Virus record (IMG/VR): IMGVR_UViG_3300017917_002374
Coordinates: 186,001-250,000 of that record
Direction: 5' to 3' (one strand)
Length of the DNA stretch: 64,000 nucleotides
Position numbers and translations under genes: made by a program. The notes beneath the pieces were generated by a model that was not told the origin of the DNA, ran no database searches, and saw only the letters and a list, made by a program, of their open reading frames with translations. Positions 14,801 to 50,180 of the stretch are shown here, piece after piece. Each line of letters begins with the position of its first letter. Within the stretch, counting starts at the first letter, position 1.

Positions 14801-17800
14801 GTTTGATTTAGCGGTCGCATTGGCTAATATAGTAATTTGAGATGTTCCAATAGTTGACGACATTCTTGCCAACACTGTATTTGCGCCAGTTACTGTCACA
14901 GTAGGAGCAAAAGTATATCCGCTACCTCTGTTGGTAATTTCAAAACTGTCAATCGCCCCATTAGCGAACAGTGTGATGTTGCCCACCGTAGCGTTGATAC
15001 CATTTTCAATTTGATCTGGAGCGTCTATTACTATGGCCACATTAGATTCAAAATAACCTGTTCCTCTTAACGGAGTACCAAGATCAGATAAAAACACTAA
15101 ATTACTTACACCATCAGTACGAGCAAATATACCAGTTATTGCTCGGTTGTTAATATCTTTAGCAACCTTTTCACTGTTGCCATCGCTTTCCTGAAACACC
15201 ACAGGAATATCATTTATTCTGATATAATCGCCCTGTAGAACTGTAATATTGGCATTGTCTCCGACTTCTTTACCAAATACCAATGGCTTATTAACAAACC
15301 GGTATACTTTTCCATTGTAATAATCAACATCTCTATAGCCAGGTGCACCAACAAATATGTTTTTTCTTGATTGGTCTACTGCCACGCTTTGACCAAAATA
15401 ACTGTCTTTGACTATATCAGGATTCTCTATTTTTTGAATCAAACTAAATTGATTTACATCAACTTTTATTTTAGCTCCGCTTCGTGGAGCAGTTGTAAAT
15501 GTAATTGTGGTTTGTTCAGGTAAAACTACATAAGCAGTGGCTATATCTTCTAAATCAACCGGACCACCGCCTGATAAAACCACAGTTGGCACCGATGTAT
15601 ATCCAGAACCTGCATTAGTTACTATCACACCTGTTACTTTGCCTGTGGTAACATCAATACTAGCAGTAGCGGTAGCACCAGTACCGCCGCCTCCTGTAAT
15701 AACCACAGTTGGTGCACTGGTGTAATTTGCCCCACCATTAATAAGCACAATGTTGGAAATTCCAGATTGACCCACGGATCCTACTTCGTAATCAATTCCT
15801 TGAGAGAGTTCAAATCCGTCAATGGTAATTTTTGTAACTCCTGCAATGTCTCTTAAGGTTTTGTAAGTGTTGGTACTTCCTGAAACTGAGCCAACAAACA
15901 CTTGATATTCTCGGTCAAAGATATAGACTTTACCTACTCTAATAATATCAGTGTTATCATCAGTTGCCCCTGCTTCCGGAGCTCCAATTGCAACTTGATA
16001 TCCTTCTTTATCTATTGCCAAAGACCAGCCAAATTTTGCCACTCCTCTTGTGACTTTACGATTTTCAGTTCCTTGCAAAGCAAAAGCGCCGCCTACTAAT
16101 TTTTTATACAGTTGATATGATCCTGAGTTAGCCCCATCAGTGTTTAATACCTTGACGATGTCACCAACTTGATAACTACCAGCAACCATTGCACTATAAG
16201 TATCCACCGTGGCCGCCAATAATTGTCTTGCTACACTGTTAGATTGTACTCCAGCTTCCCACACAATTTGATCAGTTGGCTCAAGTGTGGTAACTAAAAT
16301 ATAATACTTGGTCAAAACATTTACTGCTAAAGTAGCTTCAGTAGCAAAGTCGTTGTTAAGAAAATTTAATGTTACTCCAGTTAGGCTGTAATCAACCCCC
16401 GGAATAAAAATTCTACCACTGGCTCCTACTACATTTATCTGCTCAATTTCCACCGGAGTAGTGGCCAAAACATAGGATGTTTGTAAAATTCCTCTAATTA
16501 CAGTTGGTGTGATAGCAGTTGTAGGATATATCTGCGACAGATATAAAAAGTTTTCATTTTGAATTGTACCAAAATTTCTAAAGGTTAATACGCCTGCTAT
16601 CACAGTATAATCAAAATCTGGTTCGTACAGTTTACCAGAATCCCCTACTACTTTTACTTCTGCGCTGGTTTTGACCAAAACGTAATTAGTAATATAACTG
16701 ATTTGATTGGTTATAACTTCTATTTTTTGTTGATTTGTTGGAGTGGATTTAGCAGCGTATACATAAACTTTGTTTGCTCCTGGAGCACCAACATATAACC
16801 AATTTTCATCATCTGATACAGCCAAAGCGTGTCCAAATCTATTATTACTATCAAGTTCGGCTGGATGTAATACCTGTTGAGAAATCCAATTAGACCCGGT
16901 ACTCTTAGATATTAACACTGCACCTTGTTGATCAAAACTTCCAGGTGCTCCTACATATCCATATCCACTGCCTAATTCTAACGAGAAACCAAATTCCTCC
17001 GCGTCAAGACCAAATGTGATTAGATTTTGAACTTGAGTAAAGCTACCTTCATCTAGCTGGAAAGTTCTTACTGCTCCTGTGGTTTTTACAATTTCTAATT
17101 CGCAGTCAATGCCGTTACCAATAGAATCAGTTATTATCACCGTGGGTTTATTTGTATAACCTTGTCCAAACTCTCTTAATTGCGCAATTGTAACAGATCC
17201 GTTAGTGACATTAATATTACCAGTAGCACCTGCTCCAGTACCCCCGGACACAGTAGAGAACTGTAATCTAGGAAAGCGATAATTTTGTCCTGTTGCTGCT
17301 ACTAGCAGAGTTTCTACACTGCTAGGAGCTAGTTTTACTCTGAGAATCGCTCCATGATTGGTGTTTGTGGTAATAAGATTTATTTCAGGTGGTGATGTAA
17401 ACCCAGTGCCTGGATTTAGAATAGTGCAAGAATTAATAGAACCTGTGCCAGCACCAGTGGTAATCAAGTTAACTATTATTTGTGCTCCAACACCGCCCCC
17501 GCCTACAACTTCTACAACCGGAGGAGTAACGAATCCACTTCCACCATTTATCACTTCTACGCTTGAAATAAATGTAGGGGCTAGTCTTGCCTGCACGTTA
17601 CCACCAGAACCGCGAGAGAAATTTAATGTAGCTTCACTATTAAAATTAATTAATATTGGCCCTGTTTCAACCGTGCCTGTTAAAGTATTGATAGCAGTAA
17701 TTCTTGTATTTTCTGGAATTACATTACCAGTACCATCGTCGCCTGTAACTATGTCATTTAAGAAAACTCTTGAATGTGTAAAAGTAAGAGGTTGTGAATT

Positions 17801-20800
17801 AACAATAGACCATGTGATACTGTCAGTTAATGTGATTGTGTTGCTTGAGTAATTGATACCTGCAACTACTGCTGATGCAACTGTGTTTCCTGTGCCATCA
17901 TTGCCTGTGACAACATCTCCTACCCAAATATCATTAGAGTTTGTTAATACCACACTCTTAGAAGATATCACATTAGCAGATACTGATTTAGTTACACTCA
18001 CACTGAGTGAGGATATAGGAATAGTATTGCTTTGGTAGGTGTTTGACGATGTAGTAGCAACATTAAAATCAACAATCTCAATATTAGGTAACAGATCGTA
18101 ATTGTTTCCTGACGCTGTAAGTCTTGCGGTCAACAGCGTGCCTGATTCAGTATCTAATGTAGCAGTAACATTTTTGCCATTTTCTAGATCAGGGGCGCTA
18201 AATGTTGCTTCTGGAACTTCGTATAAAAATCCAGGATTTATAACTCTAATTCCAGAAACACCACCGTCTGAATAATCTTTGGCACCGCTGATTACCAGTC
18301 GTTGATCATTATTAATAGCAATAGCTTCGCCGTACCCTTGCTGAGACTGAGCTTCACCTTCTCTCAAAGGTAAAATTTTATCAAAAGTCCAACCTGCATT
18401 TTTTTCAAACACAGCCCACAGGTTGTTTCCTATATCATTGTCAATCCAAATCTTGTCTTTGTCTCTCCATCCATGTCTTGGCACAAAATCTACCAGTTGA
18501 TTTATTCTTGAGAATCTTACTGATACCAATGTAAGTAACACGCCAGTACCGTCAACAAATTGTTGTGATCGCAATCTCTGTAAATTTTGATATCCTTCAA
18601 CCACAAATTGATCGTTATTAGTTACTGCTGTTACTTGGTAGAAACCATTGTAATCAATATCAAAGTTTTTTACAACTATAACAGTGCCTGCTACCAAGCC
18701 GTGCGGAACATTGGTGGTAACAGTTATTCTGTTGTCCAGACCAATTTGAAACTGGTTTATCAAAACATCAGTTTCGTTAACTCTATAAACATTCCAATCT
18801 TTGTTGAAGTCTCTGGCTACCCAGATTTTAAATCCGGCGCCTATAATGTTTACTAGATCTGCATAACTGGCATAATCTGTGATATCAAAAATTGTGGCGT
18901 CAACATCATCAAGTCTAGGATACCCAGCGGTTACTGCATCAGATAATCTAGTTTTAACATCCTGTCTTAAAGAAATAATGTTTTTGTCAGTGAGATTATC
19001 TGGTGCATAATACAACTGACTAATTTCCACATTTATCAATCCCTCTTGATCAACATCAGTTTTGTTTTTTAATACCAAAGTTGATGGGTTGTTCTTTAAA
19101 TCTTGTTCAAGCAGTTGAAACTCAACTGCTTGATCGCTGCCCAGAGCACCATAATCTCCTACACGCAGAGCCCATTCTTCATACAATTCAATATTACTAA
19201 AAAGATTATTAAATCGTGCAGTGGTCAGCGCATCAATTGCATTGATAGAACCTTTTTGTTTAATGTATCCTTGATAGAACTTGGTCTGACTCACGTTATC
19301 AAGTTTGAAATCTTGAAAATAAGATCTTTCTCTGAAGCCAGTTATTCCTGAACTTAAACTATCAAGATCAGCATCTGCTACAGTGTCATCAATGTTATAG
19401 ATACTGTTGAACTTTTCAGCGTTGTAAGAAAAGTTTGGCAATAGTCCTGTCTTGATTTTTGCTTTATCAATATTACTCCAGTAAGTAAAATCAAATTCTG
19501 TTGAAGCAGGTACTTCGCTGATTGCAAAATAAAACTTTTCTTTGAAACTAATCAATGCGCTTTTTCTATAATTTCTACCAGGTTGCCATTCATCAATGAT
19601 ATCGTTATTGTAAACAAATCCACCAGGATTCAATTGTCCAGTCCAGTTGTTGGTTTTGTTTCCTATTAGTCGTAAACGGTACTGTCTGTTTCCAAGTTCA
19701 GGTTGGTAGACAATGTCTCCAAACACTGTACTATTATCCATTAATAACACATGTTCGTATTGTACAAGGTTAAAGACTGCTAGTCCAATAGTATGTCCAA
19801 ATACTGAGGTGATTTGAAAAACGTTATCATCCCGTAACACTGAAAACTGACTGTTCTTGATTATGTTAAAGTTCTGATCAAGAATTTTACTTGCGCTTAT
19901 AGAATTAACCACATGGTCAACTACACCAGCAGTGTTGATAATTTTAATGCTGTTAAACACCGGACTCAATACCAACAGATTACCACTGGCCCATCCTTGT
20001 TGACTCCATACAAGGAATTCTTGCGCACTTAGAATCCAGGTTTGTTTTGTTTCTAGATCAGGATTAAAAGTATCAAAAATTAAACCTTGCGCAGTTAGAT
20101 ACCTACCATAACTGATCAGGAAATCTACTACCTGTTGCTTTGTGGCAAATTCAAATCCATAAGGAACTATCACTTTGGTGAATTCAAAATCTCTATAAAC
20201 AATCGCAGTTTCCTCAATAGCATCTATAGAGAATACATTATTATTTCGCTTGCTAGGAATTATTGTAAAATATGGTTGCTCTAGATCGTATCCGCGCACA
20301 GCAAAGCCAGTAGTAGTTCTTTCAATTACCACTGCACTATAGATAATTTTTTCTACAGGAGCGGATTTGTTTAAGAAAATTTTATAGTTTTCTGGAGGTA
20401 AAATTATACTACTTGCATTACTCACAGGAGAACTTTGATCTGCAATCACTGTGAGGAAATTATTGTCGCTGTAGCCAGCCATTTTATAACTGAGCTTTAC
20501 TTCAACGTTTCTCACAAGATTATTAATCTTGGCCGTTCCGTCTATGGCTTTGTTTGTGAACCAATCTCTTACCCAGTTGATGTATCCTGCAGTTAGAGTA
20601 ACTACTCCTGAGTTAAGTCCATCGTCAGGAATTGTAAAATTATCTTTGTTAACTCTTTGTTTGGTATCTGCTAGAACCAACTGATCAATATTACTATCGC
20701 GTAGATATCCAACTGTGTTCATGAGAGACCCAAAGTAAAATGCTGGTCTACTCAGTGCTATGGCTATTTGAAGAGCATACGGATATTCGCTGCTTCTTCT

Positions 20801-23800
20801 CCAGGCAGTTTCAACCGGACCTTGATCCCCAATTGCCCAGCTAGAGCTCAGTCGCGTTGCATCAAAACTCACCGGAGCAAATTTTTCTGGGCTTTTTAGT
20901 TGCCCATATTCGTCAACTGGAATATATGTTGACAGTCCTGGTCTAGCGAATCTAGTATCAATACCTTGTCTTGTGCCTTCTGCAATAAAGCCTAGCTCTA
21001 GATCGTCCCACAGTACAGTATTTGATCCTGTGTACGGTGCCGGGCCATATCTATTTTCCCACCAAGAAGGCTTTTCGTAAAATCCCAGCATTTCCCAAGG
21101 AGCAAGATGAGGTCTATCTGTGTCAAAGAAATAGAAATATATTCCTCTCCAGAAGCCTGGTAAAAATTCGTCATCATTATCTTTTAAGAATTTGTAGTTC
21201 CAGGTCCATGCATTGTTACTTTGAAAAGTATCATTACTAGAGTAATTAACTGAATTAACTCCGACCCAACGCAGAAAATTTCTTGATAACAGTTGGTTAA
21301 ACTCTGCTAGAGAATAATTTATTTTTCTAAATTTACCAGGAATACTATCAATTATGTCAAGTATGGTATTGGTATATCGTACCTTGATATTGTTGTAAAT
21401 TCTTAATTCAAGTTCTAGTAATAAATCGTCTCTATAATCTCCAAATGTTGGCATGATACTACCGTCATGTCCTTGGATAACCTGTCTTGGAGTTTGATAA
21501 CTATCATCAATAAAAATGCTTGGCACATAACTAGGATACAACCCCAACTTACTAGGTGTTTCGGGAACATAACTTCCTACTGTGGTTGGTCTGTCAATTA
21601 ATTCAATGTATGACGTATAGGTCAACGTCACTGTTTCAGACAAGTCAATTGCAGCAATGTTTTGATTAAAAGTAAAATCTTTATTTTTTGCTAGTTGTCT
21701 ATAAGTGCCTGTAGCAGTATCTCCTAAGTATACTAATACACTGCGTCTGCTTGGCACTGTGTCATTGTACAAACTTGGAATTTGATATCTTAGTTGTCTG
21801 ATATCAACTATAGGAATTCTGCTGTTTGTAAAGGCTTTGCCATAAGGAACCATGTCGCTATCATACCAAGGCATGGTAGTATTTTTTCCTAGATTCACAA
21901 CTTCCATTATTTTATCAACTGCTTCAGGAATGTTACCAACGTTTATTTCAACTTTTAGAGATTGATCCAAAAATTTATTTTTAAACTTGGTGTACTCTTT
22001 TTGAGCGTATTCAATGGCTTCAATAAATTCAAAGCCTTGATCACCAAATGCCAGTCCACTGTACAATGCTGGCGAAGCATGTTGTAAAATACAGCCAGTC
22101 CAATCTTTAATTTCAAGATCTCTAAGATTATTTTTGGCTAAAATATTTCCAGACAACCCATAATTATTTTGACTCATTGCAATTAGATGCTGTCTTAACT
22201 GACCTAGAGTCAATGTATTAAAGTTTTTATTTTCGGTGTTTAAATCAATGTTTAACGGCAGTTGATAGTAGCCTAGCTCCGAAACACTAGAACTATAAAT
22301 TAAAATATCAACTTTACTAGGCGGATCAAAACTTAATTCATCTTGATTAATTACTACCACATCCAGCTGTTCATATTTGGTAACTGTGTACAAAGACTCA
22401 GCTAATAGTCTATTGTCAACATAAACTTTCAAATAAGGAATAGTTTCGCTGGCATTAGGATTAATATCTATCTGAAAATAATTTGTATTGCCATCAAAAA
22501 ATTTTGTAATAATCTGATACTGTTTGGTTTTTTCTGCCGTTTTTGTCCAAATGTTTCTATATACAAATCCACTGTCTGTTTTTTGTTTGAATAAAAATTG
22601 ATTTAATGGCAACGATGTAGATAGTTTGTTTTTAATAAAAGAAAAACTATCAGTGTCGTAGTTGTTTGCAAAAACGATATCTCCAACATTTTGGAAATTT
22701 TTATAACTTAATGCAAATCCTAGTTCTGCATCTCTCTGACCAGTTCCTTCTAGATAAGAAAATATCTTTGTTCCTTCAAATTTAGATCCAAGAAATGCAG
22801 TGGTGTCTGAAATAGAAGATCCGTCGTCATCAAACAGATCAAACAAAGGTGCTTGATTGTAAGATGTTTTTTGCTGTGCAGGGATCCATTCTTCTCCGGT
22901 ATACCAATACTGGTTATAAGTATTCACACCAGTTTGTCTTTGTTTTATTGCATTTTGTCCTGTAGTTGGCAGTGCCACAATAACTGTATCGTCACTTTCA
23001 TAAGTGTCAGGAGTAATGTCGTCAGTATTAATTACTCTTGATCGTGCATCTGTTATAAAAGCTATGGCCTTAGTAGCATAATTAAATGTCACAAGAAGCC
23101 CAGCAAACTCTGGTTGAGCATGATTTAATATTACATAATATTCAAATTCAGCAGCGCCAATTTGAATAGTGTCTACTCCAATCACTTTTGGTACAATTGA
23201 GCCAGTAGTTACACCGTTACCGGATGCATTGTACTCGCTGGTTACTGTCATTCCAACAATAATACCGTCTAGGTCAGATACTAATAGTCGGGCTGTACCA
23301 ACACTGGATGCTACCTTTGTTACTGCGGGCACAGCCGGCTCAACTGTTATTAGAGGAGCTGAAGTGTATTCTGCACCAACATTGTCAACAGAAATTGTTT
23401 GAATTTTACTTGGATTGAGATTAGTAGTTGCTGTGGTTGCAGTTGATATCTGTAATGCCAAACCTGCTGCTGCATTTATTCTTCTGTTTAATGTGATTTC
23501 ATTACTTACAGCATTTACAGTTTCAATTAACAATCCGTTACCAAGCGAGTCTGCAAGGTCGTTTACCAACATGCCTTTCTGTAGTCCTGTAACATCTTCA
23601 AGCACAATTGAAAAGGTATTGTTCACCGGTTGTTTAATAAAATAATTGCTTTTGAAGTCTCCAACAGGATTATTATCGCCAAAGAATCCTTCAACAAAAA
23701 ATCTATTTTTGGCTGTAATAAAGATTTTTGTACCTGCTGGTAGGTCAATTGATTCACCGTCAGAATCTAAACTGTCAATAGTACCATTAAGAGTGATTTC

Positions 23801-26800
23801 GTACTGAGTTTCAAAATTGCTATCAAGAACTTCTTGTACTCCTGCTACTTTGAGAATATTGGCCTGTGTTAATGCCACATCCATATAGTATTGATACAAA
23901 TTAGAATTTGGTCCAGTGGTGTCTGTACTTACATAAGGAACTCTTGAAAAATCTCTGTAGCTAACATTTTCGTTTTCCTCAACTACTAGAAAAACTAGCC
24001 AGTCTTCTTTAACATACGTGGCTTCGGGGACATTAGTCACAATCAATTTGTTACTTTGATATGTTGTTACAGATGCTGTGATTAACTCAACACTGGTAAT
24101 AACCTCAGTGGTTAGATCTTTGTTGAGTTGATATCCAGATCCAGCCGAAACTACCTTAAAATATTCAAGCACATTATCATTAAGCACCACTTCAGCGGTG
24201 GCTGCCAAAACACCCGAAGGAGAAATAGTAATAGATGGAATGGAAGTATAGCCTGCACCAGGATCAGTCACAGCTATTGCATAAACTTCGCTACTGTCTG
24301 TATAAACTGCGGCTTGAGCTTGTCTTCCTACAAATGACACTATAGTACCAACTTTTACACTCACTGGTCTTGATAGCAGAATACGATTTTCGTCTAACAA
24401 CTGTACAACTTTTATCTCTGGCTCAATTGTAAATGCGGCTGCTACTCCTCCAGTAATGTATGCAGTGTAATTTCTGCCATCTAATGTGACAGAACGTGCT
24501 TCATCTGCGTACAAGCGAAGGGTGAAAGGATCAATAACTTCAACCCAATAGGTGTTGTTATTCATCTCAACTGTGCCCAGTACACCTCTGATAGTGATCT
24601 CGTCACCATCAATTAAATTGTGAGCATCTGCAGTAGTAAGAACTACAGGATTATCAATTTCAATATTTGCAATATCAAGTGGAATTGAACCACCAGTAAT
24701 GTACATGTCAATTCCGGCCACATTACTGTTGTCAACTGTGATGGTCGTGCTGTTTCTAGATGTAGAGACTACAGTTGCAGTTTGCACCCCAGGTGGTTTA
24801 AAAATAAAATTACGATTGTTTTGAACTTGTACTAGGTCTGATACTTTTACAACCAGATTACCAAAAATATCTTCAATAGTGGCGTTCACAGGTACACCAT
24901 CGCCATACATTCTATAGCCAGTAGCAAGTCCTGTGACAGAGTTCAAAGATACCAATTGAGTGCTAAAAACTGCGCTGTTTCCATACACAGCTTTAAGAGT
25001 CACTGCTGTTGCTTCGGCTGCTTTAAAAACCAACTGTACATCGTTTGACAGTGATGCCGGACTAGAAATTAAAATTGAACTTCCGCCTAGCACATTATTA
25101 ATCACTGTACCTCCAGTGATCCCGCTGCCGTAGATCAGCTGTCCGGCTTCTAGACCAGTGGTGTTATTGAGCACAATGATATTGCTCGTAAAAGTAGCAG
25201 TGTTTCCGTAGACTGTTAATTTTTCTAAGCTATTAGGGCTGCTAATGTTAGCTGTGGCCATGGTCCCAATACCAGAACCGCCATTGGTAATACGCACATA
25301 GTCAACATGTTTGTACGTAGAATATACAGGATCAATACGGGCATCTTGTGTGTTGGGAGTATCAATCTTGACAAACGGGTCTGCAACAAAATTTAATCCT
25401 CTGTAGTTAACCGTGACATTAGCTACGCTAGTAGACTCCATTATTACTGTGCCTGTAGCTTGTACTGCACCTATGCTGGGAACTGGTCTAGAGAAAGTTA
25501 CTGCGGGTACAAAATCGTACAAAGGCGCTACCGAATAATCTACTCCTCTAGAAACAATTTCGTAATTGCTTATAGATCCGTTTTCAATAGTAACCGTGAT
25601 TTCTGCCCCGGTTCCTGCACCACCACCAACAAATCCAACTTCTGGGGTGCTTCTATAGTTAATTCCAACATTACTAAAAACTAAATCTTGTATTTCTCCA
25701 GTCACAGGATCCACAATAAGAGTAGCTGCGGCAGGAAAATCTGGATTTCCGCCTATAAAAGTAACTGTGGTATCTTCTATTATTTGAGTAGAAGATACTG
25801 TGTACGTAGGCAATAATTCAGTACTCTCGCTGACTAAATGAATCTGTGTTCTATCCGCAATAGAAATAAATTCTACTTTAAAAATTTTGTTTCTGACTTC
25901 AGGATTCTTGTCAGCAGCAAAAATTATTCTTGTTCCGTCAGTTAAAGGACGTGATACATTATTAGGCAAAGTAATCACATAGGTCTCTTTACCTTCAACT
26001 TCTTTGAATGCATCTGTAATTGTGTAATCTAAAACGTCAACTGGTGCTTTGGCTCGTTGTCCATAATTGAATAGATACAAGTCTGATTCAAATTCAATAA
26101 TTGGACGTATTGCTCTTATTGGAGTCTCAAGCAACAAATTTGGATTGTCATTATATTGTGCTGCCAACTCAATTAATTCACTATGAAACCAACGGTTGCT
26201 TCTGCTCCAGGCATTTAGATCTCTACTTCCTCTTGACACAGTAATATAATCAGGAGTAGTTAGATTGTCATTCAATGCATATTCCTCTGGTACTGTAAGA
26301 TTGCCAGTTCCAACCAGTCGTATGCTTTTGCCAACACCTTCAACAATATAAACACTGTCTGCGTATTCGCTAGGAAATGCAGTATTATCAAATCGTATTT
26401 TTAATCCATTGGTAAATCTTACACCATTTGGACTTGTATAATTTTTTCTACCAAGAATCACCCCTTCAACATCTAGACGTGCATCAGTAGGTTCAATAAG
26501 TTTAATAACACCACCATAACTGTCGCTATTTGCATCTTGATAGTATAGTTCGGTAAGAGGCGATGTAATTTGCTTTACTCTTTCCCAATAGCCTTCTGCA
26601 TTTTTTATAAATTCAACTCCGGCATTATTAGTACCGCCGCTGATATAAACTTTTTCGTTAATGTTTACAGACTGTAGATGTTCTAGCTGTACTAGTCCAT
26701 TATTAGTGCCTATGTTTGTTATTCTAATACGAAAAATATCGTATCTTTTTGATAATGGCAATAGATCACCTTGTTCGTATCCGCTTTCAACAAAAGGTGC

Positions 26801-27760
26801 TCCTTGGTCGTACTTGTCAAAATCAAAAGTGCCTTTGTCTGTCCAATCAGTATCGTTTTCTGATCTTGAAAGGAATATTAAGGTTGATCCATCTAATGAT
26901 CTAGCAGTAGCACCATCAATGCCGCCTGACTGTCTAATTATTGTAAGCAGATGATTTTGAACTCTAGAGTATGATAAATCCGTAGCATAATTTACTGTGG
27001 CTATTCTTGATGCGAATCGTTCGGCATCCTGTGCATTTGATGCTGGAACGGAAAATACAACTACACCGTTGTCTTCACCATTGTTTTCAACTCCAAAAAC
27101 TTCTCTTGACAAAGCTTCGGCTTCGGTTGATCTAGTACCAGTTTTTCCTGGCTCGGTTTGAATCCAAAAACCATTGCCTGGTTGGTTTACTGTGAATCTA
27201 TAGGTATTGCCTTTGACCAGAGTTAAAACTGGATTAGGATCTCTGCCATCACTAGAAAGTGTATAAGCTGTTTGTTTTGAATCACGAGCTACGGAAAAAT
27301 TTAATACTTCCGTAATGGCACTGGCACTTACTGCCACTTCTGGTGGTCCGTCAGGCAACCAATAATATTGATTAAAGTTAACAAACTTATCAAAGTCAAA
27401 CAGACCATTGAAATTGTAACTTTCGTTTTCAAAAAGTCTGCTGTGGTCATTGGTTAGACCACCGTAGTAATTAATTTTTTGAATTAAATCAATGTAGCTG
27501 GAATAGAATTCTACATTTTTGTTTTGATCCTGTACTACGAAACTGGCCTCAAGTTGATAATTCTGTCTGTCTTGTGTGGGTTCTTCTATGTACGAATCAT
27601 TATACTTAAAAGTTGGAGCAAATTTACGTCCTACAAATCCGTCAATTTTTTTTAAGTCAGGTTCTGAAATCAACTGATCAACAGTTGCAGCCAAAAACTT
27701 TTTGTTGGTGTCGGATCTAAATATTTCTGGTAGTAAATTAATACTTTTAATTGAGGCCAT
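8894..27760 (-). CDS. Giant (6,288 aa) baseplate wedge-associated protein, positionally gp7-like
   Basis: Uninterrupted 18.9-kb ORF directly after gp25 and gp6; GGGGTGATATA / GSGYTxxPTV modules; seven FG-type propeller blades; late promoter upstream. The gp7 assignment is by synteny only. Confidence 0.7.
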
Positions 27761-38263: not shown

Positions 38264-39154
38264 ATGAAGCACAATTACCTCAACAACAAAGACATACTGA
38301 AGGAGATACACAAAAGCAAAAATACCTATTGTTGGTATGCTGTACCGGAAGATGCAGACTACGATATCATAGTATCGTTAAACAACAAAGGAACTATAGC
38401 CAAAAAAGACGTACTGCAAGGACGTAAAAACCGTGCAGAGCGTCTAGCCAAACTAGCACATGAAGCTGCTACATCAGATGGAACCAAACGCAAACTGGAA
38501 GAATTTGAAATCAAATATACCAAAATTCCAGAAACAGACGTGGTATTTAGAGTGATGACCTGGAGCCATGTGCCTGTAGATGATAGCAAAAACAAAAAAT
38601 TGCCAGTAGAGGAAGAAATCAATGCAATTGAAACAGAATACGATGCAGGAACAGAAGAGTTAGTTAAACTGCCCACCAAATATGTCAAAGTAAATTTTCC
38701 GCCATTTCAACACTGGAAGCTCAACGAAGCCGGAGAGTACTACGTGGTTGGCATCAGTCATTGGCATTGGCCAAAAGATCAAGCCACAGGCAGCTTCAGT
38801 AGAGAACACGGAACCATGACCAAAAAGCTAGCACTCATGTTCATGAAACTGTGTGAACGCTATGCCACTCGCAGCAATTGGCGTGGATACACATATAATG
38901 ATGAGATGCGTAGTCAGGCACTACTACAACTCTCACAGATAGGACTACAATTTGATGAAAGTAAATCACAAAATCCTTTTGCTTATTATACTGCTGCTAT
39001 CACTAATTCCTTTACTAGAGTCCTTAACATTGAAAAGCGCAACCAGAATCTACGAGACGATATTCTTGAAATGAACAATCTCAATCCCAGTTACACTCGC
39101 CAAAATCAAAACAGCAGTTGGGGCGCAGGCGGTAGCATGAGTTACGAGGAATGA
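38264..39154 (+). CDS. gp55: Late-transcription sigma factor, T4 gp55-like
   Basis: HNYLNNKDILKEI N-terminus; NWRGYTYNDEM; FDESKSQNPFAYYTAAITNSFTRVLNIEKR; next to gp47/gp46. Confidence 0.85.
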   Translation: MKHNYLNNKDILKEIHKSKNTYCWYAVPEDADYDIIVSLNNKGTIAKKDVLQGRKNRAERLAKLAHEAATSDGTKRKLEEFEIKYTKIPETDVVFRVMTWSHVPVDDSKNKKLPVEEEINAIETEYDAGTEELVKLPTKYVKVNFPPFQHWKLNEAGEYYVVGISHWHWPKDQATGSFSREHGTMTKKLALMFMKLCERYATRSNWRGYTYNDEMRSQALLQLSQIGLQFDESKSQNPFAYYTAAITNSFTRVLNIEKRNQNLRDDILEMNNLNPSYTRQNQNSSWGAGGSMSYEE

Positions 39155-39203: not shown

Positions 39204-40217
39204 ATGAGCAACCTATTTAAAAAAGCCGCAGTATTCACAGACATTCATTTTGGACTGAAGTCAAACAGTGTCACTCATAACGAGGACTGTTTGGCTTTTG
39301 TAAAATGGGCCACTGCCAAGGCAAAAGAAGAAGGGTGTGACGCCTGTTTCTTTCTAGGTGACTGGCACAACAACCGAGCTGCACTGAACATTCTAACATT
39401 GAATTACAGTCTGCGAGCTCTGGAGTACATGAATGACAACTTTGATGCTGTATATTTTATACCTGGGAATCACGATCTTTATTATCGCGATAAGCGTGAT
39501 GTTCAGTCAGTTGAATGGGCACGTCACCTCCCTAATGTCAAGATTTGCAACGATTGGTTTCAAGACGGGGATGTCGTTATCGCTCCTTGGCTTGTTGGGG
39601 ATGATCATAAGCGGCTAGCCAAGAAACGTGCCAAGTATTGTTTTGGACATTTTGAACTGCCCGGTTACTACATGAACGCCATGGTACTCATGCCAGACAC
39701 CGGCGAAGCCAAACGCGAAGACCTAACTGGGTTTGAACATGTGTTTACTGGGCACTTTCACAAACGTCAAACAGCAGGCAACGTGACCTATATAGGCAAC
39801 TGTTTCCCACACAATTATGCAGATGCAGGAGATGATTCTCGTGGCATGATGATCCTGGAGTGGGGCAAGGAACCCGAGTATCATGCTTGGCCAGATCAGC
39901 CCACATATCGTGTGCTGGGTCTCAGTGAAATTGTAGACAACGCAGACAATGTGTTTAGACCCAAGATGCATGCTCGTGTGAACATTGACATTGACCTTAG
40001 CTACGAAGAAGCCAACTTTATCAAAGAAACCTTTGTGGACACTTACAAGCTGCGCGAGCTCAGTCTCATACCTCGCAAGGAAGTCAGTGTGAATGAAACT
40101 GCAACTGGTGAAATCATATTTGAAAGCATTGACACAATCGTGCAAAATCAAATCAATGCTATTGAAAGCGATCATTTTGATCCTGTACTACTGCTAGATA
40201 TATACAGAAACTGCTGA
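39204..40217 (+). CDS. gp47: Recombination endonuclease subunit gp47 (SbcD/Mre11-like)
   Basis: Metallophosphoesterase motifs DIHFG, GDWH, GNHD, GHFE and GHFH. Confidence 0.93.
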   Translation: MSNLFKKAAVFTDIHFGLKSNSVTHNEDCLAFVKWATAKAKEEGCDACFFLGDWHNNRAALNILTLNYSLRALEYMNDNFDAVYFIPGNHDLYYRDKRDVQSVEWARHLPNVKICNDWFQDGDVVIAPWLVGDDHKRLAKKRAKYCFGHFELPGYYMNAMVLMPDTGEAKREDLTGFEHVFTGHFHKRQTAGNVTYIGNCFPHNYADAGDDSRGMMILEWGKEPEYHAWPDQPTYRVLGLSEIVDNADNVFRPKMHARVNIDIDLSYEEANFIKETFVDTYKLRELSLIPRKEVSVNETATGEIIFESIDTIVQNQINAIESDHFDPVLLLDIYRNC

Positions 40218-41989
40218 TGTTCACAATTAAAACACTCACCGTAAAGAACTTTATGAGTGTGGGTAACGCCACACAGGCAATTAAATTTGACCGCCAAGAC
40301 CTCACCCTGGTACTAGGACAAAACCTAGACCTGGGCGGGGATGATACTGGTGCACGTAACGGTACAGGCAAGACCACTATTATTAATGCCTTGAGTTATG
40401 CACTCTATGGCGAAGCACTTACCCGCATACGTAAAGAAAATCTAATCAACAAGACCAACGGCAAGAACATGTTGGTTACCATTGAGTTTGAAAAGGATGG
40501 TCAAGGTTATCGTATTGAACGTGGTCGCAAGCCTAATGTGACCAAGTTCTTTGTAGGCGACGTAGAGCAAGAACAAAAAGAAGATGAAAGCCAGGGTGAT
40601 TCAAGAGAAACACAAGCAGAGATTGAACGCATGCTGGGCATGAGCCACGACATGTTCAAGCATATTGTGGCTCTTAATACTTACACCGAGCCTTTCCTCA
40701 GTTTGAAAGCAGCTGACCAGCGCATCATGATTGAACAACTGCTGGGCATTACTCAACTGAGTGAAAAGGCAGAAACACTAAAAGAACAAATCAAAGCCAC
40801 AAAAGATGCAATCACTCAAGAAGAGTTTCGCATCAAAGCCGAGCAAGATGCCAATCAACGCATGCTGGATCAGATAGAAAATCTCAAACGCAGGCAAGGC
40901 TTGTGGCAGAAAAAGCATGACGAAGATATTGCTGGATTTCAAGCAGCCTACGACGAGTTGGCCAAACTGGATATTGAAGCTGAACTTGAAGCTCACCAGA
41001 GGTTAACCGCACATGCTCAACTGCTCAAAGATCGTGCTGATGTAGAACGAGCACTAGCGCGAGCTAGAACAGATCATACAAGATACAAAAAGTCTGCAGA
41101 CAAACTAAAACAAGAACTAGACGCTTTACTAGAGCACCGATGTCATGCTTGCGGGCAGGAGTTGCACGACGACAAGCATGAAGAAATACTTGCAGACAAA
41201 CGCAACGAGCTAGATGCTGCTGCCACAGAGTACGATGCAGTTGGCGCAGACATTATAAAATATGAGCATGCACTAGAACAGCTGGGCACGCCTGGGCCTG
41301 CTCCTGTAACCTTTTACAAGCAGGAAAGTGATGCATTTGAGCATCGTGCTAGCATGGCACATGTGCTGAGCCAGCTTACTTCCAAGCAGGACGAGCAAGA
41401 TCCTTATGCTGATCAAATAACAGAAATGCAGGCACAAGCACTGGCCGAAGTGGATTATACTGTGATGAACGAGCTGGTACGCTTGCGTGATCACCAGGAT
41501 TTTCTGTTGAAATTGCTTACTAGCAAGGACAGTTTTGTGCGCAAACGCATCATAGATCAGAATTTAACCTATCTCAACACACGACTATCAGAGTATTTAG
41601 ACAGGATCGGTCTGCCGCATACAGTGACGTTTTTGAACGATTTAAACGTGAATATCACAGAACTAGGACGCGAATTAGACTTTGATAATCTGTCTAGAGG
41701 CGAGCGAAATCGCTTGATTTTGAGCTTGAGTTGGGCATTTAGAGACGTTTGGGAAAGCCTGTATCAGCCCATAAATCTACTGTTTGTGGACGAAGTTATA
41801 GACACAGGCATGGACAGCTCTGGTGTAGAAGCCAGCTTGGCCATCCTAAAGAAAATGAGCAGAGAGCGTAGCAAAAGTGTTTGGCTAGTAAGTCATAAAG
41901 ATGAGCTGGTCAGCAGAGTTAACAACGTGCTCACAGTAACCAAGAGCAATGGCTTTACAGAATATGGCACAGACATAGATTCCAAATAA
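40217..41989 (+). CDS. gp46: Recombination ATPase gp46 (SbcC/Rad50-like)
   Basis: Walker A NGTGKT, coiled coil with CHAC zinc hook, signature LSRGE, Walker B LFVDE. Confidence 0.94.
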   Translation: MFTIKTLTVKNFMSVGNATQAIKFDRQDLTLVLGQNLDLGGDDTGARNGTGKTTIINALSYALYGEALTRIRKENLINKTNGKNMLVTIEFEKDGQGYRIERGRKPNVTKFFVGDVEQEQKEDESQGDSRETQAEIERMLGMSHDMFKHIVALNTYTEPFLSLKAADQRIMIEQLLGITQLSEKAETLKEQIKATKDAITQEEFRIKAEQDANQRMLDQIENLKRRQGLWQKKHDEDIAGFQAAYDELAKLDIEAELEAHQRLTAHAQLLKDRADVERALARARTDHTRYKKSADKLKQELDALLEHRCHACGQELHDDKHEEILADKRNELDAAATEYDAVGADIIKYEHALEQLGTPGPAPVTFYKQESDAFEHRASMAHVLSQLTSKQDEQDPYADQITEMQAQALAEVDYTVMNELVRLRDHQDFLLKLLTSKDSFVRKRIIDQNLTYLNTRLSEYLDRIGLPHTVTFLNDLNVNITELGRELDFDNLSRGERNRLILSLSWAFRDVWESLYQPINLLFVDEVIDTGMDSSGVEASLAILKKMSRERSKSVWLVSHKDELVSRVNNVLTVTKSNGFTEYGTDIDSK

Positions 41990-42032
41990 TAAAATTTAAT
42001 CATGGCACCGCTGGAGATAATTATGTTTGCAA

Positions 42033-42467
42033 ATGACGTGGACCTATCAAGGAAATATTGTAGAAGAACTACCAGACAACTGTGTGGGGTTTGTCTATGA
42101 AATTGTTAACCTTGCCACTGGACGCAAGTACATTGGTAAAAAACTGGCAAAATTTGCACGAACTTCTTATCGAACAGTCAAATTAAAAAATGGCACAAAA
42201 AAACGCAAACGTGTTAAAAGCAAAATACCTTCAGACTGGCTCACCTATTACGGCTCCAATGATATTCTAAACGAAGATGTACAACAACTAGGCGCTGATA
42301 AATTCACCAGAGAAATACTCTATTATTGTTATTCCAAGGCAGAATGTAGTTATATTGAAGCAAGAGAACAGTTTACAAGACGGGTTCTTGAATCAGATGA
42401 CTACTATAACGGACACATACAAGTCCGTGTACATGGCTCACACATCAAAGGCAAATTAAGTAGTTAG
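42033..42467 (+). CDS. GIY-YIG family nuclease
   Basis: GFVYEIVNLATGRKYIGKK…YYGS…FTREIL…E; ATG 42033 preferred over the track's TTG 42027. Confidence 0.8.
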   Translation: MTWTYQGNIVEELPDNCVGFVYEIVNLATGRKYIGKKLAKFARTSYRTVKLKNGTKKRKRVKSKIPSDWLTYYGSNDILNEDVQQLGADKFTREILYYCYSKAECSYIEAREQFTRRVLESDDYYNGHIQVRVHGSHIKGKLSS

Positions 42468-42840
42468 GCTCGCACAGGCCAATCACGTGTGCCCTACACC
42501 TGGATCTAGGATCGCAGGGATGGAAGTCTTGCCGCTACAGCAAGCACTCAATCACTACCCTTCGGGATGAAGATGGCAAATTGCCGCCATTTGATTGTTT
42601 GAACAGGATTCATAAAGGCTAAAAAGACGCTCTAGCGATAGAGCACGTTTGTTAGGTGTGCTGATATACATTTAACAAACCGCCGTTGTAATAAAGACTG
42701 CGCTCGAGGTACCGGACAACCGCCTCTGTAATGCGTTAATATCAGTGACTGTGCTACTCAGATGATGTACAGCTTTGCCCGCCCTGGGCAAAGAGTGACC
42801 AATTAATCTAGATGATATACGTTCGCGCTTCGCGCATGAA
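42465..42840 (+). ncRNA. Candidate large structured non-coding RNA (family not recognised)
   Basis: ORF-free gap filled with stems: GCTCTA-GCGA-TAGAGC, CC-TTCG-GG, a 14-bp stem 42647-42680 whose loop CTGATA complements TATCAG 42740-42745, CTTTGCCC/GGGCAAAG, and others. Confidence 0.65.
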
Positions 42841-42893
42841 AAAAAAATAATATCACTGAGCGCAAGCGAAAGTGATAGATCTCGCTAGAGATC
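42839..42893 (-). terminator. Probable intrinsic terminator of the gp26-gp51 operon
   Basis: Hairpins GATCTC/GAGATC (42878-42893) and TATCACT/AGTGATA (42851-42877), followed on the minus strand by a long U-run. Confidence 0.55.
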
Positions 42894-48914: not shown

Positions 48915-48924
48915 ACATTTGGGT

Positions 48925-48930
48925 TAAATA
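48925..48930 (+). promoter_or_regulatory. Late promoter TAAATA
   Basis: 7 nt before ATG 48938. Confidence 0.55.
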
Positions 48931-48937
48931 CACTACT

Positions 48938-49174
48938 ATGAACATATTTGAGCTATTTGATCCAGAGTCTCAAGGGCGTTATACAGAAAAGCAGGATAAC
49001 TCTGTAATGAAACTCAAGGACTTGCGTAAGACTAGATTGAGTCTAGAACAGATCAATCGCATGCGCATGATGAACGATGTGCGCAAGGTAGAACATGAAG
49101 AAAAACTGAAAAAAGTCAAAAAACAGTACAAAGCCCCCTCTGCAGAAGCTCCTGCTGCCCCCGGTGGTGTATAA
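48938..49174 (+). CDS. Small basic head-region protein (gp67/gp68 position)
   Basis: 78 aa between portal and core genes; RKTRLSLEQINRMR; has its own late promoter. Confidence 0.6.
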   Translation: MNIFELFDPESQGRYTEKQDNSVMKLKDLRKTRLSLEQINRMRMMNDVRKVEHEEKLKKVKKQYKAPSAEAPAAPGGV

Positions 49175-49232
49175 TTATACATCAAAATACGTCAAAAAAC
49201 ACCGATATTTCACCAAATATTAGTAGATTATG

Positions 49233-49238
49233 TAAATA
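49233..49238 (+). promoter_or_regulatory. Late promoter TAAATA heading the core-protease-scaffold-capsid operon
   Basis: Upstream of GAGGAG RBS and ATG 49269. Confidence 0.55.
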
Positions 49239-49268
49239 ATCTTACAAGCCATATTATGAGGAGTTCCT

Positions 49269-50180
49269 ATGAACAAGTATGAAAAGTTAATTGAGTATAT
49301 CGTTAATGATGAGCAGGACAAAGCTCGTGCTCTGTTTCACGATATCGTAGTAGAAAAAAGCCGCGGCATTTATGAAAGCCTTATGGACGAAGAGCAGTAT
49401 GACGAGACCATGGGTGGTAATGCTGTAGAAGACATGGTAGACGAAGTTTCTGCTGACGAAGAAGGCATGCAAGAAGCTGAAGACGACATGGACGACATGG
49501 ACGGCGATGAAATTGGTACCGACGATGATGACATGGGTGACATGCCAGACATGGGCGGTGATGAAGAAGGCGAAGGCGATTTAGAAGATCGCGTGATGGA
49601 CCTAGAGTCTGCACTGGACGAGCTCAAAGCTGAATTTGATGCCATGATGGCAGACGAAGGCGGTGATGACATGGGCGGCATGGACGACATGGACATGGGC
49701 AGCGATGATGACGAAGACATGATGAAAAACAGCATGTTTGAAGCTGAAGAGGAAGAAGACGAAGAAGAGGACGAGGAAGACATGTCCGAATCACGTCGTA
49801 ACATGTCCGCAGCTGATCAGATTCGTGAATACGTTGAGAAAGTCAGCGACGGTCACGGTGCTGAGAAAAAAGGCGGCGCTGAAGGCCACGAAGTGGGCAA
49901 GGGTGGTAGCGTAAGCGTGAACAAAAACCACATTGTTGCTGGAAAAAACGACATGGGCGGCACCGCAGCTAACATCGTAAAAGGTGGTAGCGAGCAAGCA
50001 CCTGACGGCACTAGCCCTAAAGGCAAAGTGGGCGGATTTGTAAAGAAGGGTCCTGATCTAATTGGTGACGTAGAAAACCGTGTGAACAGCAAGACCAAAG
50101 GCTACACCAACAAGCAGAGCGCAAGCAAAGGCGAAGAAGGTGGAGTAAACAAGACCAGTATTGAATCTGGTGGCAAGTGA
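49269..50180 (+). CDS. Highly acidic prohead core/scaffold-like protein
   Basis: D/E/M/G-rich low-complexity middle; immediately precedes gp21. Confidence 0.6.
   Translation: MNKYEKLIEYIVNDEQDKARALFHDIVVEKSRGIYESLMDEEQYDETMGGNAVEDMVDEVSADEEGMQEAEDDMDDMDGDEIGTDDDDMGDMPDMGGDEEGEGDLEDRVMDLESALDELKAEFDAMMADEGGDDMGGMDDMDMGSDDDEDMMKNSMFEAEEEEDEEEDEEDMSESRRNMSAADQIREYVEKVSDGHGAEKKGGAEGHEVGKGGSVSVNKNHIVAGKNDMGGTAANIVKGGSEQAPDGTSPKGKVGGFVKKGPDLIGDVENRVNSKTKGYTNKQSASKGEEGGVNKTSIESGGK

What the first reader, a model, noticed from the sequence alone, without database searches (positions are those of the whole stretch)
42465..42840. Ornate ~370-nt structured RNA candidate with a loop-loop pseudoknot
This is the only large ORF-free gap in the window, and it is tiled with stems: CCTG-GATC/GATC-CAGG (42499-42518); CTTGC/GCAAG (42528-42544); a junction AATCA/TGATT enclosing a C-UUCG-G hairpin and ATGGC/GCCAT; GCTCTA-GCGA-TAGAGC (GNRA loop); a 14-bp stem 42647-42680 with three G-U pairs whose loop CTGATA is complementary to TATCAG at 42740-42745; GAGG/CCTC with CGG/CCG (42706-42726); CTTTGCCC/GGGCAAAG (42773-42793); and a repeated AGATGAT (42760, 42810). 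Stable tetraloops and G-U pairs favour plus-strand RNA function over DNA palindromes. I cannot match it to tRNA, tmRNA, RNase P or a known ribozyme core.
Basis: partly seen in the sequence, partly recalled or inferred. Interest (0 to 1): 0.8.

Follow-up and report, generated by a model that had tools for sequence, protein, structure and literature searches.

The report
Large pseudoknotted phage RNA, partly known
The gap holds a real non-coding RNA of about 430 bases from an uncultured freshwater jumbo T4-like phage: its first third is the known but unexplained Polynucleobacter-1 motif, and the rest is an undescribed knotted core plus two copies of a short sequence that always mutate together.

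Summary
Window 42467-42893 (+ strand) is a structured RNA gene.

The claim that it matches nothing is wrong. Positions 42467-42600 hit Rfam RF01718 (Polynucleobacter-1) at 119 bits against a threshold of 37. That family is a 141-nt candidate motif from 2010 with no known function.

Not described in the papers I could search:
- a core with two pseudoknots (42629-42745), conserved more widely than the Rfam domain;
- two tandem modules, each a single-stranded element followed by a hairpin;

The two modules carry the same heptamer (AGAUGAU, at 42760 and 42810). It varies between phages (12 types) but is identical within 178 of 179 distinct sequences. No complementary partner was found nearby.

The RNA follows a GIY-YIG gene at a fixed position in most contigs. 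Two relatives have their own sigma-70-type promoter.

Function is unknown. My best guess is a trans-acting RNA offering two identical pairing sites. No transcript data were obtained.

The parts
42027..42467 (+). Upstream gene: 146-aa GIY-YIG protein (SegE-like). The RNA starts at its stop codon.
   Evidence: Pfam PF19835, E = 3.6e-31. It lies upstream on the same strand in 108 of 114 loci of the first set and 80 of 89 of the second. It is 64-78% identical across the first set, more conserved than gp46. In Melnitz phage the homologue follows the nrd genes and has no RNA after it.
42467..42600 (+). Domain 1, the Rfam Polynucleobacter-1 motif. Helices: 5' tail-to-loop pseudoknot 42467-69/42478-80; P1 42472-76/42488-92; P2 42499-506/42510-18; P3 42526-31/42541-45; P4 42551-54/42592-95; P4a 42555/42569 and 42559-60/42565-66; P5 42573-77/42586-90.
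   Evidence: RF01718, 119.4 bits, model positions 1-141 of 141. 18 of 35 pairs show changes on both sides; 95.4% of cells paired.
42596..42626 (+). Linker containing the nearly invariant UGUUUGAA and AGGC-AAAAGA.
   Evidence: Nearly invariant columns in alignments A1, A2 and A4.
42629..42745 (+). Domain 2, the core with two pseudoknots. P6 42629-34/42639-44 (GNRA loop); P7 42647-59/42668-80; pseudoknot 1, P7 loop 42661-67 with 42739-45; pseudoknot 2 (P8), 42685-89 with the P9 loop 42716-20; P9 42700-03/42733-36 and 42706-09/42723-26. The stretch GGUACCGG...ACCGCC is invariant.
   Evidence: with covariance model R1. No Rfam family matches it. The core is also present in relatives whose 5' domain is not Polynucleobacter-1.
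42745..42793 (+). Module 1: GUGAC (42745-49), single-stranded element 42754-42767 with heptamer AGAUGAU at 42760-66, then hairpin P10 (42773-80/42786-93).
42795..42835 (+). Module 2: GUGAC (42795-99), single-stranded element 42804-42817 with the identical heptamer at 42810-16, then hairpin P11 (42825-28/42832-35, UUC loop).
   Evidence: Position by position, the letters match those of module 1: mutual information 0.7-0.9, same letter in 98-100% of sequences. On a tree there are 16/15, 4/4, 6/6 and 3/3 coordinated changes with one discordant row. P11 stems are highly variable yet still pair; about a fifth of the sequences show at most a very weak P11.
42851..42877 (+). P12 hairpin: variable outer stem 42851-57/42871-77 around a conserved inner GA-GC-GNRA-GC-GAA.
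   Evidence: Pairs 42856/42872 and 42857/42871 covary and are 99% Watson-Crick or wobble. The motif GAGCG-NNNN-CGAA recurs across the family.
42878..42893 (+). P13 hairpin (42878-83/42888-93), terminator-like; it is followed by a run of U in many relatives. It abuts the stop codon of the minus-strand 72-aa ORF (42894).
   Evidence: Pairs 42879-82 with 42889-92 covary; seen family-wide.

Best explanation
Shown:
- Window 42467-42893 (+ strand) encodes one stable, highly structured non-coding RNA of about 430 nt, conserved in well over 150 distinct sequences from uncultured T4-like phages of fresh water. The largest contigs, 262 and 345 kb, are of jumbo-phage size.
- Its parts are: a 5' domain (Rfam Polynucleobacter-1); a core with two pseudoknots that is the most widely conserved part; two tandem modules, each a single-stranded 13-15-nt element followed by a hairpin; and two closing hairpins, the last terminator-like.
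- The two single-stranded elements carry the same heptamer. It differs between phages but is identical within a phage.

Inferred:
- The RNA is made as the 3' end of the gp55-gp47-gp46-GIY-YIG operon, or from its own sigma-70-type promoter where that gene is absent.
- It acts in trans. The knotted body would be a scaffold, binding a protein or building a tertiary structure. The two modules would present two equivalent pairing sites for one lineage-specific nucleic-acid partner of the form 5'-U-(heptamer complement)-GGG-U-3'. It would then work as a two-seed regulatory RNA, a sponge or a guide.
- The partner has not been found.
For: That it is an RNA gene:
- Rfam hit.
- Covariation in every helix and in three pseudoknots, in two separately collected sets.
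- G-U pairs and the fold z-score favour the + strand.
- Fixed position in most contigs.
- The flanking genes can be replaced or be absent while the RNA is kept.
- L259 and L327 have TTGACA-17-TATAAT and TTGACT-16-TATAAT immediately upstream of the RNA. L259 also has a terminator hairpin before the promoter.

That the modules are two equivalent pairing sites:
- Heptamers are identical in 178 of 179 distinct sequences, with 12 types.
- About 28 coordinated changes on a tree with one discordant row. On well-supported branches the second copy changed the same way in 8 independent pairs, the opposite way in 0, and not at all in 1 (sign test p = 0.008).
- The fixed differences between the two copies are all transitions: C/U, U/C and C/U in 179 of 179, and G/A in 149 of 179. 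A single RNA partner could therefore pair with both copies using G-U wobble.
- Each element is followed by a covarying hairpin, as in seed-plus-hairpin small RNAs.
- There are always exactly two modules.
Against: - No transcript evidence. The two RNA-type runs held almost nothing of this region, and one of them is probably DNA.
- No partner was found: not within the RNA, not in the 720 nt upstream, not in 5-10 kb of flanks of 87 loci (49 matches against 50.9 expected), and not in the 64-kb window.
- If the partner tolerated wobble, A/G differences between the two copies should be common. They are almost absent (1 of 179).
- Each heptamer change would then need three coordinated mutations, and one position changed about 16 times.
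- The heptamers were located by requiring at least 6 of 7 matches. The earlier set was located independently of that.
Confidence: 0.4

Rival explanations
1. A cis-acting untranslated-region element. It would be either a 3' protective or terminating structure for the GIY-YIG operon, or a leader (riboswitch-like) controlling the gene that follows.
For: It starts at the stop codon of the upstream gene in most loci. In 41 of 62 distinct loci a + strand ORF begins about 70-130 nt after module 2. Weinberg et al. 2010 marked the motif as possibly cis-regulatory and noted the conserved upstream gene family (PMC2864571).
Against: The downstream ORFs fall into at least nine unrelated groups and are absent in 21 of 62 loci, including the window. 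The upstream gene is separated from the RNA by unrelated inserted genes in several loci. GIY-YIG homologues in hundreds of cultured T4-like phages include one, Melnitz, that was checked and has no RNA after the gene. Two relatives have their own promoter. About 430 nt with three pseudoknots is far more than a stabiliser or terminator needs.
Confidence: 0.15
2. A ribonucleoprotein scaffold. The two modules would be two equivalent binding sites for one sequence-reading protein (a dimer or a tandem binder) whose specificity co-evolves, as with iterons and Rep proteins or lambdoid nut sites and N proteins.
For: Direct repeats that are identical within a genome but differ between genomes are typical of co-evolving protein sites (established knowledge). 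Long invariant stretches such as CAGGGAUGGAA and GGUACCGG...ACCGCC suggest protein contacts.
Against: One heptamer position changed about 16 times on the tree and shares almost no information with any column of the adjacent GIY-YIG protein (maximum 0.14, against 0.79 with its twin position). A protein would have to change specificity that often. A protein model does not predict the transition-only fixed differences.
Confidence: 0.15
3. A reiterative template or strand-transfer RNA, like the telomerase RNA template or the non-coding RNAs of defence reverse transcriptases. A polymerase would copy the 47-60-nt segment between the repeats, and the product would re-anneal on the other repeat. That would demand identical repeats without any third partner.
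For: Identity without any detectable partner. A defined unit of 47-60 nt sits between the repeats. A pseudoknotted core lies next to it, as in telomerase RNA (established knowledge). Tandem-repeat DNA synthesis from a non-coding RNA is reported for defence reverse transcriptases (abstract of bioRxiv 10.64898/2026.06.29.735271, listed).
Against: No reverse transcriptase was seen among the window's annotated genes, though only part of a probably 260-345 kb genome is available. The segment between the repeats is conserved as a hairpin structure rather than as sequence. Unit length shows no period of three. The one discordant sequence (L028; copy 1 G, copy 2 A) gives a C-A mismatch for the expected transfer direction.
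Confidence: 0.1
4. A DNA-level element (replication origin with iterons, or a recombination or insertion site) rather than an RNA.
For: Both flanks of the element are hot spots for insertion of unrelated accessory genes. It has direct repeats around a palindrome.
Against: Helices keep pairing through G-U intermediates on the + strand only. Three pseudoknots covary. The region matches an RNA covariance model. No deletion junction between the repeats appeared in the DNA assemblies that were laid on the region, though contigs drop rare variants. The heptamer is not a genome-wide motif.
Confidence: 0.05

Closest known systems
Polynucleobacter-1 RNA motif (Rfam RF01718; Weinberg et al. 2010, PMC2864571)
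   Same: Window 42467-42600 is a full-length match. As the authors noted, it lies downstream of a conserved gene family with cyanophage relatives and comes from fresh water.
   Different: The published motif is 141 nt, rests on 16 representatives, was not found in any purified phage, and has no known function. Here it is only the 5' third of an RNA of about 430 nt in T4-like phage contigs. A sister group keeps the core and modules but has a different 5' domain with no Rfam hit.
Large ornate RNAs of unknown function linked to phages (GOLLD, ROOL, HEARO)
   Same: Large size, several pseudoknots, phage or metagenome origin, found by comparative analysis.
   Different: No Rfam match to any of them. 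Smaller than GOLLD and ROOL. No adjacent IscB-type or HNH-type nuclease as with HEARO. Those RNAs are not reported to carry co-varying direct repeats (my own knowledge).
Telomerase RNA templates and the non-coding RNAs of defence reverse transcriptases
   Same: Direct repeats flank a defined segment and vary in parallel between lineages. They sit next to a pseudoknotted core.
   Different: No reverse transcriptase found. The flanked segment is a structure-conserved hairpin. Only a resemblance, not tested.
Seed-plus-hairpin bacterial small RNAs and RNA sponges
   Same: A single-stranded element is followed by a stable hairpin, present twice. The wobble-compatible differences fit pairing to one RNA target.
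   Different: Embedded in a much larger folded RNA. No target known.
T4 gene 60 translational bypass element
   Same: A T4-like phage; two matched short sites about 50 nt apart with a hairpin between them; read in one frame, the heptamer contains a codon followed by UAA or UGA.
   Different: No reading frame enters the first site. The spacing from GUGAC varies out of frame, and a stop codon follows the second site as well (and direct reading). Rejected.

Membership tests
Polynucleobacter-1 RNA (RF01718) | Covariance-model score above the curated threshold over the whole model | tested here: met
   119.4 bits against 37; model positions 1-141 of 141; E = 2.3e-25.
Polynucleobacter-1 RNA (RF01718) | The model's helices are kept by compensatory changes in homologues | tested here: met
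   95.4% of cells paired; 18 of 35 pairs changed on both sides; 0 of 500 shuffles as high.
Polynucleobacter-1 RNA (RF01718) | Lies downstream of the conserved GOS11034 / P-SSM2 ORF218-like gene (Weinberg 2010 supplement) | tested here: inconclusive
   A conserved GIY-YIG gene lies directly upstream and has hundreds of cyanophage homologues. Identity with GOS11034 or PSSM2_218 was not checked directly.
tmRNA (standard or permuted) | tRNA-like domain and tag reading frame detectable by ARAGORN or Rfam | tested here: not met
   ARAGORN found none in the window and Rfam gave no hit. A related contig carries a separate permuted tmRNA elsewhere.
Group I intron carrying a GIY-YIG homing endonuclease | Intron core recognisable, and an interrupted host gene with exons on both sides | tested here: not met
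   No Rfam intron hit even at E up to 10. gp46 is full length against its family profile. What follows the RNA is a convergent gene or unrelated ORFs.
Hammerhead ribozyme (considered for P12, GA-stem-GNRA-stem-GAA) | Single-stranded CUGANGA core and a cleavage site between three helices | tested here: not met
   The would-be core nucleotides form the covarying outer stem of P12. No Rfam hammerhead hit.
Translational bypass element (T4 gene 60 type) | An open reading frame reads into the take-off codon and resumes after the landing codon | tested here: not met
   No ORF enters 42760. In-frame stops lie upstream, and a stop follows the second site (direct reading). The spacing has no frame.
Template RNA of a reiterative reverse transcriptase (telomerase or defence type) | Direct repeats bounding the template that vary in parallel between lineages | tested here: met
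Template RNA of a reiterative reverse transcriptase (telomerase or defence type) | A partner reverse transcriptase and a tandem-repeat product | not testable with these tools
   None among the window's annotated genes. The rest of the genome and any product could not be examined.

The most novel reading that the evidence does not exclude
The two heptamer-bearing elements form a programmable read-out on a conserved knotted scaffold. That would make this a new class of phage RNA that either guides or sequesters a lineage-specific nucleic acid through two identical seeds, or serves as a repeat-bounded template for reiterative copying. Either reading would explain why the two copies change together about 28 times with almost no intermediates.
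Probability: 0.25. Interest if true: 0.85.

Novelty: new variant of a known kind. Interest (0 to 1): 0.62.

Why it matters
- Large, intricately folded bacterial and phage RNAs without a function are few, and several of those later solved revealed new biology.
- This analysis turns a 141-nt orphan motif that has gone unexplained since 2010 into a defined gene of about 430 nt. It now has boundaries, three pseudoknots, a promoter and terminator in some relatives, a viral home in uncultured freshwater T4-like phages (contigs up to 345 kb), and hundreds of sequences for modelling.
- The same-letter covariation of two direct repeats is a rare signature. It makes a direct test possible: find what reads the heptamer. 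If the partner is a nucleic acid, the element is programmable.

Tried and rejected
- **Cultured relatives.** No DNA match in 50,697 phage records. The nearest GIY-YIG homologue is in Methylophilales phage Melnitz (54% identity), which lacks the RNA. The nearest portal proteins are in PA5oct-like Pseudomonas jumbo phages (51%).
- **Transcripts.** No informative RNA run. The single read-laying run showed only low-depth contigs of relatives.
- **PDB.** No sequence match for the GIY-YIG protein.
- **Partner for the heptamers.** Searched by mutual information across the RNA and 720 nt upstream, by an alignment-free search of each sequence, in flanks of 87 loci and in the whole window. Nothing was found except a non-specific U/G-rich linker at 42594-42603, which pairs with any heptamer type.
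- **Rejected readings of the repeats:**
  - Sigma-70 promoters: only a 9-nt spacer between GUGAC and the -10-like hexamer, and a quarter of sequences lack the final T.
  - A genome-wide motif.
  - Short ORFs or a gene-60-like bypass: no frame enters.
  - Copy-number variation: always two modules.
  - Gene conversion: fixed differences sit inside the tract.
  - Co-evolution with the adjacent GIY-YIG protein.
  - Self-complementary dimerisation: works only for the AG and GG types.
- **P12 as a hammerhead:** rejected.
- **Downstream ORFs.** Unrelated to one another; two weak, sub-threshold Pfam hits only.
- A slicing slip printed long stretches of two loci. It does not affect any result.

Full report
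**What is there.** The window is the structural and late-gene region of a T4-like myophage.
- On the + strand lie the late sigma factor gp55 (38264-39154), gp47 (39204-40217), gp46 (40217-41989) and a 146-aa GIY-YIG protein (42027-42467).
- The gap follows, then a 72-aa ORF and a baseplate hub protein on the minus strand.
- Further on are the portal, prohead protease and major head protein. Elsewhere in the window are baseplate wedge and tail fibre genes and a 6288-aa ORF.
- No cultured phage matches at the DNA level. The nearest portal proteins are in PA5oct-like jumbo phages, at 51% identity.
- The DNA occurs in freshwater, pond, lake, soil and estuary metagenomes.

**Checking the observation.** Rfam places a full-length Polynucleobacter-1 RNA (RF01718) at 42467-42600 on the + strand: 119.4 bits against a threshold of 37. 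Nothing else in the gap matches, even at E up to 10.

I collected homologues in two ways:
A covariance model of domain 2 recognised 88 of the 100 that I searched.

Counts on a named structure:

| Region and set | Cells paired | Shuffled | Partner slid | Pairs changed on both sides |
|---|---|---|---|---|
| Domain 1 | 95.4% | 85.0% | 26-39% | 18 of 35 |
| Domain 2, first set | 93.1% | 73.9% | 36-49% | 28 of 34 |
| Domain 2, second set | 96.5% | 71.9% | 31-61% | 28 of 34 |

RNAalifold even prefers it to the hairpin stem.
- A second pseudoknot (42685-89 with 42716-20) covaries: U-A 44 / C-G 40, and G-C 57 / A-U 26.
- A third, smaller pseudoknot joins the 5' tail to the first hairpin loop (42467-69 with 42478-80).
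- P10 is present in all 83 sequences examined, with 24 stem variants. P11 has 37 variants; about a fifth of the sequences show at most a very weak P11.
- Two further hairpins, P12 and P13 (42851-42893), covary and recur across the family.
- The RNA therefore fills the whole gap, 42467-42893.

**Strand and transcription.** G-U pairs are common in covarying helices and would be A-C mismatches on the other strand. Only the + strand folds better than shuffles (z = -1.91 against 0.01).

In most contigs the RNA begins at the stop codon of the gene upstream.
- That gene is usually the GIY-YIG gene: 108 of 114 loci in the first set and 80 of 89 in the second.
- In several loci an unrelated gene has been inserted between the two, and the RNA then starts at that gene's stop codon.
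- Nine loci of the second set have no GIY-YIG gene nearby.
- Two of those, L259 and L327, carry TTGACA-17-TATAAT and TTGACT-16-TATAAT directly upstream of the RNA. L259 also has a terminator hairpin before the promoter.
- P13 is followed by a run of U in many relatives.

This is the anatomy of an RNA gene that is usually co-transcribed with an early or middle operon. Direct transcript evidence could not be obtained.

**A wider family than Rfam's.**
- The domain 2 core, GGUAC-GG...ACCGCC, is more widely conserved than domain 1.
- Many relatives have variant domain 1 sequences.
- A group of at least eleven loci keeps the core, both modules, P12 and P13 but has a different 5' domain that no Rfam model recognises.
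- The original description (16 representatives, 141 nt) reported that the 3' half was not always detected, that the motif lay downstream of a gene family with a cyanophage relative, and that it was absent from purified phages (PMC2864571 supplement).
- I found no later functional work. The only other full-text mentions of RF01718 are in two bacterial genome papers.

**The twin heptamers.** After the core come two modules of the same plan:

GUGAC, then 6-10 nt, then NNA-(CUC or UCU)-heptamer-(G or A), then a hairpin.

- The heptamers (42760-66 and 42810-16) are AGAUGAU in the window. Other phages have GGAUAAU, GGAUGAA, GCAUAAU, GAAUGAU, ACGAAAU, AGUUGAA, AGAUGAG and others, 12 types in all.
- The two copies are identical in 178 of 179 distinct sequences. 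The heptamers in that count were located by requiring at least 6 of 7 matches. The earlier set of 83 sequences was located without that criterion and shows the same result.
- The highest-scoring non-helical column pairs are these same-letter pairs, exactly 50 columns apart.
- I built a tree from neighbouring sequence that excludes the modules. The four variable positions change 16/15, 4/4, 6/6 and 3/3 times in copy 1 / copy 2, with a single discordant row.
- On well-supported branches, the second copy changed the same way in 8 independent pairs, the opposite way in 0, and not at all in 1 (sign test p = 0.008).
- The most variable position shares almost no information with the phylogeny or with any column of the GIY-YIG protein.
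- No complementary sequence that changes with the heptamer exists within the RNA, in 720 nt upstream, in 5-10 kb of flanks of 87 loci, or in the 64-kb window.
- The differences between the two copies that never change are all transitions: CUC against UCU, and G against A after the heptamer. One RNA strand reading 5'-U-(heptamer complement)-GGG-U-3' could therefore pair with both copies using G-U wobble.

**Interpretation.** That this is a structured RNA gene I hold at about 0.95.

How it works is inference. I favour a trans-acting RNA in which the knotted body is a scaffold and the two modules present identical pairing sites (0.4 including the RNA-gene part).
- For it: the transition-only differences, the element-plus-hairpin plan, and the constant number of two modules.
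- Against it: the missing partner, and the near absence of A/G mismatches between the copies, which a wobble-tolerant partner should allow.

Rivals:
- a cis-acting untranslated-region element (0.15);
- two sites for a co-evolving protein (0.15);
- a repeat-bounded template for reiterative copying (0.1);
- a DNA-level element (0.05).

The template model explains identity without a third partner. It lacks a polymerase, and it has to accommodate a structure-conserved hairpin inside the unit.

**Comparison and novelty.** The 5' third is a member of a known family whose function is unknown. The remaining two thirds, the sister group, the placement in T4-like phages with very large genomes and the twin heptamers are, as far as the searchable literature shows, undescribed. 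I file it as a new variant of a known kind, of moderate to high interest.

Noticed in passing
window 8894-27760 (-): A single 6288-aa ORF next to baseplate wedge and tail fibre genes. That is very large even for a jumbo phage. It exceeds the tool's size limit and was not analysed.
   Followed up: no
junctions at window 42467 and 42893; loci L011, L017, L019, L022 and many others: Both ends of the RNA are hot spots for insertion of unrelated accessory genes. At least four different genes (228-334 aa) sit between the GIY-YIG gene and the RNA. At least nine unrelated groups of ORFs (about 180-640 aa; only two weak, sub-threshold Pfam hits) sit between the RNA and the convergent 72-aa ORF.
   Followed up: partly
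L288:3911-4304, 5169-5243, 11087-11169: A related contig carries a permuted tmRNA, a tRNA with anticodon CUA (amber-reading) and a tRNA-Tyr around its copy of the RNA. This suggests a cluster of stable-RNA genes and possibly stop-codon reassignment in that phage.
   Followed up: partly
L243, about 8411-8600: A natural variant in which the 3' strand of pseudoknot 1 and all of module 1 are missing, so only the second (UCU-type) element remains. It could be a defective copy or an assembly artefact.
   Followed up: no
L252, L253, L255, L259, L264, L281, L320, L322, L327, L333, L346: A sister group that has the same core, modules and closing hairpins but a different 5' domain with no Rfam hit. It usually lacks P11.
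   Followed up: partly
window 42557-58 / 42567-68: Two alternative forms of the small hairpin in domain 1 swap an A-U pair and an A-C mismatch between neighbouring positions (ACCC-GAAA-GGAU against AUCC-UUGACA-GGAC). The result is strong covariation that is not Watson-Crick.
   Followed up: partly
L241 (Methylophilales phage Melnitz, MZ577097.1, 30449-30889): The closest cultured homologue of the GIY-YIG gene sits directly after the ribonucleotide reductase genes. That is where T4 has denA (endonuclease II), so the gene may be its counterpart. No PDB sequence match supported this.
   Followed up: partly
window 42371-42437 and 42706-42772: In two DNA metagenomes the summed contig depth rises 10- to 30-fold over these short stretches. 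This fits many related phages in one sample sharing the most conserved segments.
   Followed up: no
window 48915-49268: A second ORF-free gap of about 350 nt, between the portal gene and the next ORF. It was not examined. Just downstream, at 49276-49407, the domain 2 model gave only a chance-level hit.
   Followed up: no
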